From: Octopus sinensis
Lineage: Eukaryota
Length of the DNA: 11,225 nt
Direction: 5' to 3'
NCBI RefSeq assembly: GCF_006345805.1
Contig: NW_021827095.1
Coordinates: 1-11,225, forward strand
Part shown: positions 3,378 to 8,400 of the stretch, piece after piece
Numbering within the stretch: the stretch's first letter is position 1
Layout: each line of letters opens with the position of its first letter
Made by a program: the position numbers and the translations under genes
Notes under the pieces: generated by a model
Seen by the model: the letters and a program-made list of their open reading frames with translations, nothing else
The model's database searches: none
What the model was told of the DNA's origin: nothing

Positions 3378-3915
3378 TCCATGTATGTATGTATGTATGT
3401 ATGTATGTATGTATGAATGTATGTATGTGTGTGTGTATGTATGTATGTATGTATGTATGTATGTATGTATGTATGTATATATGTATGTATGTGTGTGTAT
3501 GTATGTATGTATGTATACATGTATGTATGTATGTATATATGTATGTATTTGTGTATGTATGTATGTATGTATGTATGTATGAAAGTGTTTATGTGCGTAT
3601 GTATATATGTATGTTGACCAAAATTGAGTGTATGATAGAAGAAGGCTTGCTCTTCATTCCGTAGGAGAAAAAATTCAAGTCGGACCATGTTAACACCAAA
3701 AATTATTTACATCAAAAAGGTGCTTTTTTTCTATGAAAATCCCTATTTTTTAACGATTTTTTGACTGGTGTGTCGCTATTTTTCGGTGTATTTCAACCAG
3801 CAAAATGTTCACTTAAAGAGAATAACAAGCTACATAATGCAAAATTTTTACTTTTCAAAAATTCCAATTCTAAAGGGTCGAAACAAACACGAGCAGCGTC
3901 GGGCTATACTGCTAG
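3378..3915 (+). mobile_element. Candidate non-autonomous Helitron-like element carrying an (ATGT)n microsatellite
   Basis: The 3' end is CTAG|T (3912-3916), preceded by a degenerate GC-rich hairpin CACGAGCAGCGTCGGG (3888-3903). A possible 5' end A|TC lies at 3377-3379. The terminus resembles insect Lep1-type ...CGGGC....GCTAGT ends. The 5' boundary is uncertain. Confidence 0.55.
3381..3612. repeat. (ATGT)n microsatellite
   Basis: Direct. Confidence 0.97.
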
Positions 3916-4428: not shown

Positions 4429-4481
<53 letters not shown>

Positions 4482-4675
4482 AATTAGTAGTAGTAGTAGT
4501 AATAGTAGTAGTAGTAATAGCAGAAGTAGTAGTAGCAGCAGCAGTAGTAGTAGTAGTAGTAGCAGCAGAAGCAGTAGTAAAAGTAGTAGCTGCAGCAGCG
4601 GCAGCAGCGGCAGCAGCAGCAATAGTAGTAGTAGTAGTAGTAGTAGTAGCAGTAGTAGTAGTAGTAGTAGTAGTA
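4373..4675. repeat. Compound (GCA)n/(GTA)n microsatellite
   Basis: Direct; source of the poly-Val/Ala, poly-Ser, poly-Leu, poly-Thr and poly-Tyr ORFs. Confidence 0.96.
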
Positions 4676-5070: not shown

Positions 5071-5369
5071 TAGAAAGAAAATGACAGCTTATTAATGACC
5101 TGTGTTAGCAGTGCTATTAAATCCCTTGTAGAACACACTATTGACTTATAAACGCGCTTAGTTACTTTACAATATATTACGGCTGCATAACGAAATACAG
5201 TCATCAATATTTAGGTACCAACTTCCTGGAATGTGTTTAATATGTAAAACTGGTATATGCAATAATGTTACACTGCTATATTTAGTATTTATAAAAGCAA
5301 TAAGTTTCTAGGTTAGATGGGTGCTGATGAAGGATCAAGAACTCCTGAAATATGGCATATGCAGCCATT

Positions 5370-5680
5370 TTTTTCGCCCTTTTCAAACCTAGTCAGGCTT
5401 ATGGGTGCGGTTTCCCGGTTTCTATGGCGTATGTGTTCCCCCCAGCTGGATGAGACGCCAGCCCATCGCAGCGTTACTCAAGGAACAGGAAGAGAGAGTG
5501 AGTGAGAGAAAGTTGTGGCGAAAGAGTACAACAGGGTTCACCACCACCCCCTGCCGGAACGTCGTGGAGTTTTTAGGTGTTTTCGCTCAATAATCACACA
5601 CAACTCCCGGTCTGGGAATCGAAACCGCGATCCTCCGGCCGCGAGTCTGCTGCCCTAACCACTGGGCCATTCCGCCTCGA
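5370..5680 (-). mobile_element. Full-length tRNA-derived SINE (family B) with 14-bp target-site duplication
   Basis: The minus-strand head GAGGCGGAATGGCCCAGTGGTTAGGGCAGCAGACTCGCGG...GGTTTCGATTCCCAGACC contains Pol III A- and B-box-like motifs, and the 3' end has a short A tail. It is flanked by the direct repeat CATATGCAGCCATT at 5356-5369 and 5681-5694. Confidence 0.9.
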
Positions 5681-6318
5681 CATATGCAGCCATTAGCCAT
5701 TTTTTTTATCTTCGGTCTCATTGTTGCTTAAATTAGGTGTACTGGGATACGAAACATCATAACAAAATCAAGGCTGGTTATAATTTTTATAGGAAATCTC
5801 TAAAGACTAAAGATAACCTTGACAAATGCCTCTTTATTACTGTGGATGGTACTTCTATTTCTTTCTGCAAGCAATCGAACGTGTTCATACCTGGAGAGGG
5901 AGCCGCTCAGCTTGGCCTTAAGATATATGCCTACTCTATAAATCACATTTATAATTTGTCATTATTCATCGATCTTAAAACGTGCGTAACAGATATGACA
6001 TAGAAGAATGATCAACTTCGTGTTACATGTTTTTCTCAGGGAAGGACGAGGAACTTGGTTTTCTTGTTTTCGTTTCGTTCTTCTCGTTCAATTTTCTATA
6101 TCAACCTTCTTTGCGTTTTTCTTCTCGTTTTTTTTTTTTTTGTCTTTTGTAAGTTTATAACTATCCAGCGTCATGGTTTTTAAAATATATATATAGCACA
6201 GAAACAGAGCCTGTACCACTGCTTGGAGATACATGGCGTATTTTGAAAATATGCCTATTTAAAGTATCACAAAAGCATGAAACTATTAGTAGCGTTTTCG
6301 TAATGTGTATTAAGTTAA

Positions 6319-6414: not shown

Positions 6415-6600
6415 AGGCCTAGGAGTGGCTGTGTGGTAAGTAGCTTGCTTACCAACCACATGGTTCCAGGTTCAGTCCCACTGCGTGGCAGCTTGGGCAA
6501 GTGTCTTCTACTATAGGCTCGGGCCGACGAAAGCCTTGTGAGTGGATTTGATAGACGGAAACTGAAAGAAGCCTGTAGTATATATATGTGTGTGTGTACG
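6415..6600 (+). mobile_element. 5' half of SINE family A (head and core) running into an expanded microsatellite
   Basis: A-box-like TGGCTGTGTGG (6426-6436) and B-box-like GGTTCAGTCCC (6469-6479); the core matches the reverse complement of 2965-3114; the 3' half is absent. Confidence 0.9.
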
Positions 6601-6733
6601 TATGTATGTATGTATGTATATATGTACGTACGTACGTATGTATGTATGTATGTACGTACATATGTATGTATGTATGTATGGTATGTATGTATGTGTGTGT
6701 GTATGTATGTATGTATGTATGTATGCATGTACG

Positions 6734-6767
<34 letters not shown>

Positions 6768-6792
6768 TGTATGTATGTATGCATGTACGTAC

Positions 6793-6823
<31 letters not shown>

Positions 6824-6880
6824 TGTATGTATGTATGTATGTATGTATGTATGTATGTATGAATGTGGGTATGTATGTAT
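6580..6880. repeat. (GTAT)n microsatellite
   Basis: Direct. Confidence 0.97.
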
Positions 6881-6931
6881 GAAAAGGAAGAGTCAGAAAA
6901 GTGAAATCATATCACGAAATGTCCTACTTGA

Positions 6932-7235
<304 letters not shown>

Positions 7236-7523: not shown

Positions 7524-7618
7524 ACTCAAACACACACACACATACATACATACATACATACATACATACATAACATACATACATACATACATATACATAT
7601 ATATATATATATATATAT
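7524..7618. repeat. (CA)n/(CATA)n/(TA)n microsatellite
   Basis: Direct. Confidence 0.95.
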
Positions 7619-7672
7619 AATAAAGCAATAATAAATCTCAGAGCGAGTTATAAACAGTAGCTGCAACACATC

Positions 7673-8080
7673 GTGACGTATATTTGCCATTTAAATATGG
7701 CTAACCCCCTAAGGGTGGATGCTACTGTAGTTTGTAGCCCCAGGAGGACACCTCCTCCAGCTGGCTATAGACACACTTTCTGTGCCCTGTCAGTATTTGC
7801 AAATATCGATACTGGAAAAAGGTATAAGTATTTGTGAAGGGAACCTACTTTTCATCGACAACTGTGATTGTCACACGCTGATGACGGGTCAATACCCAGA
7901 AACTGGAGTCCGTGTGTATCATAAGTTGGAGACGGGAAGGATGGCTTCCCTTTGCAAATACTGATAGGGCACAGAAAGTGTGTCTATAGCTAGCTGGAGG
8001 AGTTGTCCTCCTGGGGCTACAAACTACAGTAGCATCCACCCTTAGGGGTTAGCCATATTTATATGGCAAATATACGTCAC
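7673..8080. mobile_element. Fold-back element: about 130-bp inverted arms (7673-7803 and 7951-8080) around a 147-bp loop
   Basis: The left arm GTGACGTATATTTGCCAT...CAGTATTTGCAAA is the reverse complement of the right arm, with about five differences by manual comparison. No target-site duplication is evident; (TA)n tracts lie on both sides. Confidence 0.92.
7859..7928 (+). ncRNA. Type I hammerhead ribozyme (minimal stem III, Penelope/retrozyme type)
   Basis: Stem I CACACG (7872-7877)/CGTGTG (7911-7916); core CTGATGA (7878-7884); stem II GGGT-CAAT-ACCC (7886-7897); GAAA (7899-7902); stem III AC-TGGA-GT; cleavage triplet GTC (7908-7910). Stem I extends via TGAT/ATCA and CAACT/AGTTG. Positions 10.1/11.1 are a non-canonical C.A pair. 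Confidence 0.85.
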
Positions 8081-8125
8081 TATATATATATTATATATAT
8101 ATATATATATATAGATATTATATAT
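8081..8125. repeat. (TA)n microsatellite
   Basis: Direct. Confidence 0.95.
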
Positions 8126-8294
8126 ACAATACACACCATATACTTACAGTATACAGAAAGTCTAGCACAAATAAAAAAGATATAGAGAGTGTGGCGGCCA
8201 GATTAAATCGTAAGTAGCCATGAGAGCGAAGTAGTCAGACCGAATAGACAGACATACAGATAGATACACAAACAGAAGAGATAAACAGACAAAT

Positions 8295-8400
<106 letters not shown>

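What the first reader, a model, noticed from the sequence alone, without database searches (positions are those of the whole stretch)
7859..7928. Type I hammerhead ribozyme in the loop of a fold-back element
Seen: the hammerhead elements are present in the correct order and spacing on the + strand. These are a perfect 6-bp stem I (CACACG/CGTGTG), CTGATGA, a 4-bp stem II with CAAT loop, GAAA, a 2-bp stem III (AC/GT) and GTC, with predicted cleavage after C7910. Stem I continues past a bulge (TGAT/ATCA, then CAACT/AGTTG), as in natural ribozymes with loop-bulge tertiary contacts. Known: minimal type I hammerheads with a short stem III and palindromic loop mark Penelope-like retroelements and metazoan non-LTR retrozymes, and these cleave as dimers. 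Here ACTGGAGT is one base from the palindrome ACTGCAGT. Inference: this is a self-cleaving RNA module of a small cephalopod mobile element. The C.A pair at 10.1/11.1 and the broken palindrome suggest this copy may be partly inactivated.
Basis: partly seen in the sequence, partly recalled or inferred. Interest (0 to 1): 0.9.

Follow-up and report, generated by a model that had tools for sequence, protein, structure and literature searches.

The report
Solo hammerhead ribozyme in a fold-back repeat
A real hammerhead (self-cutting RNA) sequence of the usual animal type sits at the tip of a 408-base hairpin-shaped repeat inserted in a TA microsatellite; it is most likely a lone, probably weakened copy of a known class of ribozyme-carrying retroelements, so a new member rather than a new kind.

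Summary
At 7872-7916 (+) every invariant hammerhead core base is present, in type I order. Helix I is 6 bp and continues past a 3x1 internal loop. Helix II is 4 bp with a CAAU loop. Helix III is 2 bp with a UGGA loop. The predicted cut is at C7910/C7911. Chance is an unlikely cause: a strict descriptor gave 0 hits in 40 Mb of random sequence, and a given 33-nt hairpin loop would carry these features about 5e-8 of the time.

Rfam gives no hammerhead hit, even at E<=10. The cause is the base of helix II, where C7885/A7898 replace G10.1-C11.1. Four natural hammerheads with the palindromic helix III (ACUGCAGU) from metagenomes also miss Rfam's gathering scores. A model built from three of them plus Rfam's consensus scores the candidate 40.6 bits; stemless core matches score 11-26.5.

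The fold-back resolves into four parts: a 280-nt structured unit (7801-8080), an inverted copy of its last 128 nt (7673-7800, 96% identical), a 53-nt tail, and (TA)n on both sides. This is the published insertion architecture of Penelope-like elements. The best reading is a solo retrozyme/PLE-derived copy with a probably impaired ribozyme. No family copies, transcripts or host identity could be obtained.

The parts
7532..7619 (.). Left flank microsatellite, (ACAT)n running into (TA)12 at 7596-7619. Presumed target sequence.
7620..7672 (+). 53-nt unique 'tail' between the left (TA)n and the palindrome. It resembles nothing else in the window.
7673..7800 (-). Left arm. Inverted copy of the last 128 nt of the unit (123 of 128 positions identical to the reverse complement of 7954-8080: 4 substitutions, 1 indel). 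Complementarity drops abruptly at 7800/7801.
7801..8080 (+). Forward unit, 280 nt, GC 44%. On its own it is strongly structured (MFE -104.8 kcal/mol, z = -6.9).
7827..7962 (+). 136-nt imperfect hairpin inside the unit (helices of 17, 2, 6, 2, 5, 5 and 6 bp), with the hammerhead core at its tip. It amounts to a very long helix I.
7859..7871 (+). Distal helix I, 5' side: CAACT (7859-7863), bulged G7864, TGAT (7865-7868), internal-loop TGT (7869-7871).
7872..7877 (+). Helix I, 5' strand CACACG. Pairs with 7911-7916.
7878..7884 (+). Core box CUGAUGA (C3 U4 G5 A6 U7 G8 A9).
7885..7898 (+). Helix II. GGGU (7886-7889) pairs with ACCC (7894-7897); loop CAAU (7890-7893). It is flanked by C7885 and A7898, which read either as a C.A mismatch at 10.1/11.1 or as one extra nucleotide on each side.
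   Evidence: non-canonical pair marks in the alignment
7899..7902 (+). Core box GAAA (G12 A13 A14 A15.1).
7902..7909 (+). Helix III, ACUGGAGU: A15.1-U16.1 and C15.2-G16.2, loop UGGA. One base (G7906) from the palindrome ACUGCAGU.
7910..7911 (+). Predicted cleavage site, 3' of C17 (C7910), before C7911.
   Evidence: position rule of the hammerhead (established knowledge) applied
7911..7928 (+). Helix I, 3' strand: CGUGUG (7911-7916), U7917, AUCA (7918-7921), UA, AGUUG (7924-7928).
7954..8080 (+). Right arm, the 3' domain of the unit. It is a string of five short local hairpins (z = -3.1 on its own).
8081..8126 (.). Right flank (TA)n microsatellite.

Best explanation
Bases 7872-7916 (+) are a genuine type I hammerhead-ribozyme sequence of the canonical animal build. 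It tips a 136-nt imperfect hairpin inside a 280-nt, highly self-paired, low-GC unit (7801-8080). The unit is preceded by an inverted copy of its own last 128 nt (7673-7800) and a 53-nt tail, and the whole 461-bp block lies inside a (TA)n microsatellite. This is the insertion architecture described for Penelope-like elements (PLEs). PLE RT/endonuclease machinery is thought to mobilise the small hammerhead-carrying non-LTR retrozymes. I therefore read the block as a solo, non-autonomous retrozyme/PLE-pLTR-type retroelement copy. Inferred mechanism: in a transcript the core folds and G12 activates the 2'-OH of C7910. The chain is then cut between C7910 and C7911, leaving a 2',3'-cyclic phosphate and a 5'-OH. 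In tandem family copies this would release unit-length RNAs that a tRNA ligase circularises and a PLE reverse transcriptase copies back into DNA. Ribozymes with a 2-bp helix III usually act as dimers through the palindromic helix III. This particular copy is probably weak or dead, for three reasons. It has no partner within 11 kb. Its helix III is off-palindrome (G7906). The conserved G10.1-C11.1 pair is replaced by C7885/A7898. Shown here: the motif, its non-random nature, and the anatomy of the repeat. Inferred: retroelement origin, cleavage, and impairment.
For: All core bases and the three helices are present. Chance is excluded at the window scale and is unlikely at the genome scale. A covariance model (R1) built from Rfam's Hammerhead_1 consensus line plus three metagenome hammerheads, with the candidate left out, gives 40.6 bits full length, E 1.7e-11. 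About 95 stemless matches to the core and helix III pattern score only 11-26.5 bits with R1, so helices I and II add independent signal. An untrained natural hammerhead, L075, scores 38.6 bits. The build matches the published canonical metazoan type I: helix I 6 bp, helix II 4 bp, helix III 1-2 bp with a small palindromic loop (PMC4209133). The closest sequence found is L088, three tandem roughly 530-bp repeats each carrying AGCACG-CUGAUGA-CU-GGUC..GACC-GAAACUGCAGUC-CGUGCU. Like the candidate, it has extra nucleotides after A9. The arms end abruptly at 7800/7801 and 7953/7954, and the unit alone folds with z = -6.9. Unit GC is 44%. [quoted passage not shown] PLE insertions are described with an inverted 5'-truncated copy at the 5' end, a short tail at one end and (TA)n targets (PMC8557442). 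Solo retrozyme monomers are known (bioRxiv 10.64898/2026.07.22.740005).
Against: No Rfam hammerhead model reports the site, even at E<=10 in 86 nt. L011 and L075 reach 32-33 bits, and L088 and L115 reach 25 and 17 bits. The highly conserved G10.1-C11.1 pair is absent. No second copy, tandem partner or RT/GIY-YIG coding remnant was seen in the window. No family copy was found in any collection, so there is no covariation or consensus evidence. The tail is 53 nt against a published 30-40 nt. The (TA)n target preference is documented for Naiad PLEs, which lack canonical hammerheads. R1 is partly circular, because three of its four training sequences were fished with a pattern derived from the candidate. 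The predicted hammerhead fold is 5.6 kcal/mol above the MFE, although the same gap is seen in the natural comparators.
Confidence: 0.5

Rival explanations
1. Fold-back or MITE-type DNA transposon. The 128-nt arms are terminal inverted repeats recognised by a transposase, and the hammerhead sits in the internal region, either captured or inherited from a retroelement.
For: Long, 96% identical terminal inverted repeats enclose a 153-bp internal region. The overall size, about 410 bp, is typical of MITEs.
Against: No target-site duplication abuts the arms: the left flank is ...AACACATC and the right is TATATAT.... A 53-nt unique stretch lies between the left (TA)n and the left arm only. The termini match no transposon superfamily terminal motif that I know of (from my own knowledge). 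No transposase or other copies were found.
Confidence: 0.17
2. Same retroelement, but the ribozyme is active as it stands. The C7885/A7898 arrangement would be a tolerated family feature, and the very long helix I would let the monomer fold and cut without a partner.
For: About 60,000 axolotl HHR_Amex2 motifs carry a U.U mismatch at the base of helix II and still cleave: 22% per hour as a monomer, and better as a dimer (PMC7229834). Minizymes lacking helix II can retain activity (PMC544870). An extra nucleotide after A9 is conserved in PLE hammerheads (PMC4209133) and is seen in L088 and L115. The 3x1 internal loop after a 6-bp helix I, with a 4-bp helix II, has the geometry used for loop-loop contacts.
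Against: G10.1-C11.1 is described as highly conserved, and where it changes the changes are compensatory. Rfam models drop the site by more than 20 bits relative to L011 and L075. Helix III has only 2 bp, and its self-duplex is weakened by G.G mismatches (-8.0 against -12.5 kcal/mol).
Confidence: 0.2
3. Chance look-alike. A palindrome supplies helix I for free, and its loop happens to contain CUGAUGA...GAAA...UC.
For: Helix I is not independent evidence inside a palindrome. No Rfam hit. A second, relaxed-descriptor motif at 5318-5379 turned out to be chance.
Against: The probability for a given 33-nt loop is about 5e-8. There were 0 strict hits in 40 Mb of random sequence. The candidate scores 14 bits above the best of about 95 stemless pattern matches. 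Helix lengths, loop sizes and the near-palindromic helix III match the canonical animal type, although none of these were required by the search.
Confidence: 0.04
4. Ribozyme-tipped hairpin RNA gene. The locus is kept because its transcript forms a roughly 170-bp hairpin, and the hammerhead opens the loop to give free-ended double-stranded RNA for small-RNA production.
For: The full transcript would be an almost perfect long hairpin, with the cleavage site in its apical region.
Against: There is no evidence of transcription or small RNAs. Dicer does not need an opened loop (from my own knowledge). The ribozyme looks impaired. The near-perfect arms are better explained as a recent duplication (96% identity, abrupt ends).
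Confidence: 0.04

Closest known systems
Canonical metazoan type I hammerhead ribozymes (newt satellite 2, Schistosoma Sm-alpha, cave-cricket pDo500; Rfam RF00163 and RF02275)
   Same: Identical core boxes. Helix I is 6 bp followed by an asymmetric internal loop and a closing stem. Helix II is 4 bp with a loop beginning CAA. Helix III is 2 bp with a 4-nt loop, close to a palindrome. Cleavage is after a GUC triplet.
   Different: C7885/A7898 replace the G10.1-C11.1 pair. The helix III loop is not palindromic. There is no Rfam hit at E<=10. It is a solitary copy rather than part of a tandem array.
Non-LTR retrozymes of animals (Cervera and de la Pena 2020, PMC7229834; solo monomers in bioRxiv 10.64898/2026.07.22.740005)
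   Same: A small (280 nt), low-GC (44%), highly self-paired non-coding unit carrying one type I hammerhead. Monomeric 'solo' copies are documented.
   Different: No tandem repeat here. The ends of the unit are not at the cleavage site. An inverted partial copy is attached. CircRNA expression is untested.
Penelope-like element insertions and their pLTR hammerheads (PMC4209133, PMC8557442)
   Same: An inverted 5'-truncated copy abuts the 5' end of the forward copy, there is a short extra tail at one end only, and the insertion is in a (TA)n microsatellite. C7885 could be the extra nucleotide between A9 and helix II.
   Different: No RT/GIY-YIG ORF in the window. The tail is 53 nt, not 30-40. The hammerhead is of the canonical kind (6/4 bp helices) rather than the minimal PLE kind (helix II 6-8 bp, no helix III). 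The (TA)n preference is documented for Naiads, which lack canonical hammerheads.
Metagenome contig JGI11756J13266_100240 (locus L088): three tandem roughly 530-bp repeats, each with a type I hammerhead
   Same: It is the nearest sequence found. ACG-CUGAUGA-C and GAAACUG-AGUC-CGUG are shared. It has extra nucleotides (CU) after A9, a 4-bp GC-rich helix II, and helix I closed by a second stem after an internal loop.
   Different: It has a proper G10.1-C11.1 pair, a palindromic ACUGCAGU, a tandem arrangement and no long inverted repeat. The rest of the repeat is unrelated.
Axolotl HHR_Amex2 (PMC7229834)
   Same: A natural, abundant type I hammerhead with a 2-bp helix III plus tetraloop and a mismatch at the base of helix II.
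   Different: Its mismatch is U.U, it lies in 350-bp tandem repeats, and its activity was shown experimentally.

Membership tests
Hammerhead ribozyme, type I | Invariant core: C3 U4 G5 A6 N7 G8 A9, G12 A13 A14, A15.1-U16.1, H17 | tested here: met
   CUGAUGA 7878-7884, GAAA 7899-7902, A7902-U7909, C7910
Hammerhead ribozyme, type I | Three helices around the core, with helix I open-ended and helices II and III capped by loops | tested here: met
   Helix I is 6 bp plus an extension, helix II 4 bp, helix III 2 bp. The full-length alignment to model R1 scores 40.6 bits.
Hammerhead ribozyme, type I | G10.1-C11.1 pair closing helix II next to A9 and G12 (highly conserved, not absolute) | tested here: not met
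   C7885 and A7898 occupy these places, and the R1 alignment marks the pair as non-canonical. Natural exceptions exist: a U.U mismatch in axolotl HHR_Amex2 and compensatory changes in crickets.
Hammerhead ribozyme, type I | Match to the curated covariance models (Rfam RF00163, RF02275 and clan CL00010) at the gathering score | tested here: not met
   No hit at gathering or at E<=10. Control: four natural relatives also miss gathering, at 32.3/34, 33.3/34, 24.9/52 and 16.9/52 bits, but they are visible at E<=10.
Hammerhead ribozyme, type I | Covariation or conservation of helices and core across family copies | not testable with these tools
   No other copy in the window or in the viral, metagenome, prokaryotic-genome or protein collections.
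Hammerhead ribozyme, type I | Site-specific self-cleavage 3' of H17 | not testable with these tools
   Needs in vitro transcription or RNA end mapping.
Animal non-LTR retrozyme | Head-to-tail tandem repeats of a 150-450-bp unit, each with a type I hammerhead | tested here: not met
   There is a single unit and no second hammerhead in 11 kb. Solo monomers are, however, recognised derivatives.
Animal non-LTR retrozyme | Non-coding, low-GC (<45-50%), highly self-paired unit RNA of about 170-400 nt | tested here: met
   280 nt, GC 44.3%. MFE z = -6.9. Only short ORFs.
Animal non-LTR retrozyme | Expression as linear and circular unit-length RNA | not testable with these tools
   No transcript data.
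Penelope-like element insertion product | Inverted 5'-truncated copy abutting the 5' end of the forward copy | tested here: met
   7673-7800 is the reverse complement of 7954-8080 (123 of 128 positions), with an abrupt break at 7800/7801.
Penelope-like element insertion product | 30-40-bp tail at one end only; microsatellite, often (TA)n, target | tested here: inconclusive
   A 53-nt unique stretch lies on the left only, with (TA)n on both sides. The length is off, and the region is packed with microsatellites anyway.
Penelope-like element insertion product | RT plus GIY-YIG ORF (autonomous element), or sequence identity to a PLE pLTR | tested here: inconclusive
   No long non-repetitive ORF in the window. 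No profile search of the six frames was run, and no PLE library was available.
MITE / fold-back DNA transposon | Terminal inverted repeats flanked directly by a target-site duplication | tested here: not met
   TIR-like arms are present, but the flanks (...CACATC | ... | TATATA...) share no duplication.

The most novel reading that the evidence does not exclude
The unit is a working 'ribozyme-tipped hairpin'. On this reading a family of roughly 280-410-nt rod-shaped RNAs places a hammerhead exactly at the rod's tip. Self-cleavage either opens a long perfect hairpin into free-ended double-stranded RNA that feeds small-RNA pathways, or defines the ends of a viroid-like rod-shaped circular RNA. 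That would be a processing design not described for animal retrozymes, in a lineage (if the host is a cephalopod) where no hammerheads were reported in the papers I could search.
Probability: 0.05. Interest if true: 0.75.

Novelty: new member of a known kind. Interest (0 to 1): 0.35.

Why it matters
Type I hammerheads mark an unusual class of animal retroelements (retrozymes and Penelope-like elements) that spread through self-cleaved, circularised RNAs. If the host is a cephalopod, this locus would extend that class to a lineage for which the searchable literature reported none. It also gives a clean example of a canonical hammerhead unit packaged in the inverted-copy-plus-tail architecture of PLE insertions. 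That fits the recent proposal that retrozymes are non-autonomous PLE derivatives. There is a practical lesson too. Rfam gathering thresholds missed this site and four natural relatives, so genome annotation by Rfam alone under-counts such elements. On its own, a single and probably crippled copy is of modest interest.

Tried and rejected
1. Rfam cmscan was run at gathering on the whole window, then at E<=10 on 501 nt and on 86 nt. No hammerhead hit appeared; the only hits were low-complexity look-alikes in the TA repeat.

2. A second hammerhead-like motif at 5318-5379 (+) was found with a relaxed descriptor (expected about 0.05 per window). I rejected it for four reasons:
- It scores only 11.7 bits with R1.
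- Rfam does not report it.
- Its helix III is separated from U16.1 by a U-run.
- Its helix I 3' strand lies inside a SINE-like insert bounded by the direct repeat CATATGCAGCCATT (5356 and 5681), so the motif straddles an insertion junction.

3. The search for family copies found nothing in any of these:
- blastn of the element against the window;
- a 25-mer and a 24-mer from the arm in viral, metagenome and prokaryotic-genome contigs;
- the 64-aa ORF and a three-frame translation of the palindrome against the 5.8-billion-protein collection;
- an exact look-up of ten window ORFs.
Host identification therefore failed as well.

4. A viral-contig scan for the palindromic-helix-III hammerhead pattern gave 0 hits.

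5. Thermodynamics does not discriminate. The hammerhead fold is 5.6 kcal/mol above the MFE, and the natural comparators show the same 6-7 kcal/mol gap.

6. No tRNA genes were found.

7. An assembly-artefact palindrome is unlikely, because the centre is asymmetric (77 against 43 nt) and the arms carry substitutions.

8. The first MAFFT alignment (A1) misaligned the GAAA box and was discarded in favour of A2.

Full report
**Observation**

On the + strand the sequence reads CACACG (7872-7877), CUGAUGA (7878-7884), C7885, GGGU (7886-7889), CAAU, ACCC (7894-7897), A7898, GAAA (7899-7902), C-UGGA-G, U7909, C7910, CGUGUG (7911-7916). In hammerhead numbering this gives C3-A9, G12-A14, the A15.1-U16.1 pair and C17. 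Helix I is a perfect 6 bp, helix II is 4 bp and helix III is 2 bp. Helix I continues past a 3x1 internal loop (UGU / U) into UGAU/AUCA and CAACU/AGUUG. The predicted scissile bond is C7910/C7911.

**Chance**

- A strict type I descriptor hits the window only at this site, on either strand.
- The same descriptor gave 0 hits in 40 Mb of random sequence with the window's dinucleotide content. It gave 1 hit when helix I was relaxed to 5 bp.
- By extrapolation from that one hit, this implies far fewer than 0.001 hits per window, but perhaps tens per multi-gigabase genome.
- The site lies at the tip of a palindrome, so helix I is not independent evidence. I therefore computed the chance that a given 33-nt hairpin loop starts with CUGANGA, ends with UH, and contains a helix II of at least 4 bp, GAAA and a paired 15.2/16.2. 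It is about 5e-8.
- Chance is therefore a poor explanation.

**Covariance models**

Rfam release 15 reports no hammerhead at gathering scores. It also reports none at E<=10 in 501 nt or in 86 nt.

A metagenome scan for CTGATGA-N(10-24)-GAAACTGCAGTC, the candidate's helix III repaired to the palindrome, returned 120 loci. Most lack helices and are chance matches. Four are convincing hammerheads:
- L088 carries three copies in tandem repeats of about 530 bp.
- L011, L115 and L075 are single copies.

Rfam sees all four, but none reaches its gathering score:

| Locus | Rfam model | Bits | Gathering score |
|---|---|---|---|
| L011 | Hammerhead_1 | 32.3 | 34 |
| L075 | Hammerhead_1 | 33.3 | 34 |
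| L088 | Hammerhead_HH9 | 24.9 | 52 |
| L115 | Hammerhead_HH9 | 16.9 | 52 |

Failing the gathering score is therefore uninformative for this kind of hammerhead. Being invisible at E<=10 in an 86-nt search, where L075 scores 33 bits, is a real difference.

The pattern among the controls explains it. L011 and L075 have G10.1-C11.1 directly after A9 and score highest. L088 and L115 have one or two extra nucleotides after A9 and lose 8-16 bits. The candidate has C7885 before helix II and A7898 after it.

I built a small model, R1, from Rfam's Hammerhead_1 consensus line plus L088, L011 and L115, with the candidate excluded. With filters off it scores the candidate 40.6 bits over the full model, E 1.7e-11 in the window. 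The model is partly circular, because three training sequences were fished with a candidate-derived pattern. The scan supplies its own control for that. About 95 loci carry the same core and helix III by construction but have no helices, and they score 11-26.5 bits. The untrained L075 scores 38.6 bits. Helices I and II of the candidate therefore add roughly 14-24 bits that the pattern did not require.

**Departures from the consensus**

1. The base of helix II. This reads either as a C.A mismatch at 10.1/11.1, or as a PLE-style extra nucleotide after A9 plus an unusual extra A before G12. [quoted passage not shown] The literature calls G10.1-C11.1 highly conserved, with compensatory changes in cricket satellites. 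It also records about 60,000 axolotl motifs with a U.U mismatch at the base of helix II that still cleave, poorly as monomers and well as dimers.
2. Helix III. ACUGGAGU is one base from the palindrome ACUGCAGU found in all four comparators. The predicted self-duplex weakens from -12.5 to -8.0 kcal/mol.
3. No partner. No second hammerhead lies within the window, so an intramolecular dimer is impossible.

The nearest-neighbour energy of the hammerhead fold is 5.6 kcal/mol above the MFE. The three natural comparators show the same 6-7 kcal/mol gap, so this says nothing either way.

**Anatomy of the fold-back**

- The inverted repeat is real. The whole region folds at -298 kcal/mol, z = -30.
- Column-by-column comparison shows two regimes. 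Positions 7673-7800 match the reverse complement of 7954-8080 at 123 of 128 positions (4 substitutions, 1 indel). Complementarity then collapses abruptly.
- The 77 nt on the left (7801-7877) and the 43 nt on the right (7911-7953) pair only in patches. Uniform decay of one perfect palindrome cannot give that step.
- The simplest reading is a forward unit 7801-8080 (280 nt, GC 44%) plus an inverted copy of its last 128 nt.
- The unit alone is strongly structured (z = -6.9). A 136-nt imperfect hairpin (7827-7962, with helices of 17, 2, 6, 2, 5, 5 and 6 bp) carries the hammerhead core at its tip. Five small hairpins follow and make up the arm sequence.
- To the left of the palindrome lie 53 unique bases (7620-7672). 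Beyond both ends lies (TA)n, at 7596-7619 and 8081-8126.
- No target-site duplication abuts the arms.

**Interpretation**

This layout matches the published description of Penelope-like element insertions. [quoted passage not shown] They carry a 30-40-bp tail at one end, and they prefer microsatellite, often (TA)n, targets (PMC8557442).

Canonical type I hammerheads in animals belong to non-LTR retrozymes. These are small, low-GC, highly self-paired units expressed as circular RNAs (PMC7229834). Retrozymes are now argued to be non-autonomous derivatives of PLE pLTRs, and they occur as solo monomers as well as arrays (bioRxiv 10.64898/2026.07.22.740005).

I therefore read the locus as a solo retrozyme/PLE-derived unit with a probably weakened hammerhead. 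The steps of transcription, cleavage at C7910, ligation and reverse transcription are inferred from the family, not shown here.

Orientation is ambiguous on geometry alone, since the inner region could belong to either arm. I assign it to the + strand because that is the ribozyme's sense strand.

**Rivals**

- A MITE or fold-back DNA transposon fits the arms, but not the missing target-site duplication or the one-sided 53-nt stretch.
- An intact, active ribozyme cannot be excluded, given the axolotl precedent.
- Chance is very unlikely.
- A ribozyme-opened hairpin that makes small RNAs is possible but unsupported.

**What could not be done**

No family copy was found. I searched the window, viral, metagenome and prokaryotic-genome contigs and the protein collections. 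The window is non-coding, microsatellite-rich eukaryote-like DNA with a tRNA-derived SINE-like insert.

**Verdict**

This is a new member of a known kind: a canonical animal type I hammerhead in a retrozyme/PLE-type element. Here it is a single, probably crippled copy. Interest is modest. It would rise if genome-wide copies showed an active family, or if the hairpin-tip design proved functional.

Noticed in passing
window 5375-5680 (minus strand), direct repeats at 5356-5369 and 5681-5694: A tRNA-derived SINE-like insert. On the minus strand it carries an A-box-like TGGCCCAGTGG (reverse complement of 5659-5669) and a B-box-like GGTTTCGATTCCC (reverse complement of 5614-5626). It is bounded by the 14-nt direct repeat CATATGCAGCCATT, which looks like a target-site duplication. 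ARAGORN calls no tRNA.
   Followed up: partly
window 5318-5379 (+): A hammerhead-like string: GGGUG-CUGAUGA-AGGA..UCCU-GAAA-...-UC-GCCC. It shares 14 of 16 bases with the real motif around the CUGAUGA box. It scores 11.7 bits with model R1 and straddles the SINE insertion junction, so I judge it a chance look-alike.
   Followed up: yes
window 6933-7234 and 8258-8397: (ATAG)n arrays lie on both sides of the roughly 1-kb block that holds the fold-back. Inside them, (ACAT)n/(TA)n and (TA)n abut the element. The layout could reflect nested insertions into one microsatellite, or a local duplication.
   Followed up: no
whole window, e.g. 182-308, 980-1326, 1922-2227, 3381-3614, 4429-4675, 6581-6881: Microsatellite density is exceptionally high, with 30 TRF rows covering tri- and tetranucleotide arrays of 100-350 bp. 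No credible protein-coding ORF is present.
   Followed up: no
L088 1-1154 (metagenome contig JGI11756J13266_100240): Three head-to-tail repeats of about 530 bp, each with an identical type I hammerhead (60.2 bits with R1; Rfam HH9 24.9 bits, below gathering). It is a retrozyme-like tandem array sitting in a metagenome, and Rfam thresholds would not annotate it.
   Followed up: partly
L011 1426-1469 (-), L075 1199-1241 (-), L115 2854-2925 (-): Single-copy type I hammerheads with the palindromic helix III ACUGCAGU in metagenome contigs. All fall just or well below Rfam gathering scores, and the two checked (L011 and L115) have no inverted-repeat context.
   Followed up: partly
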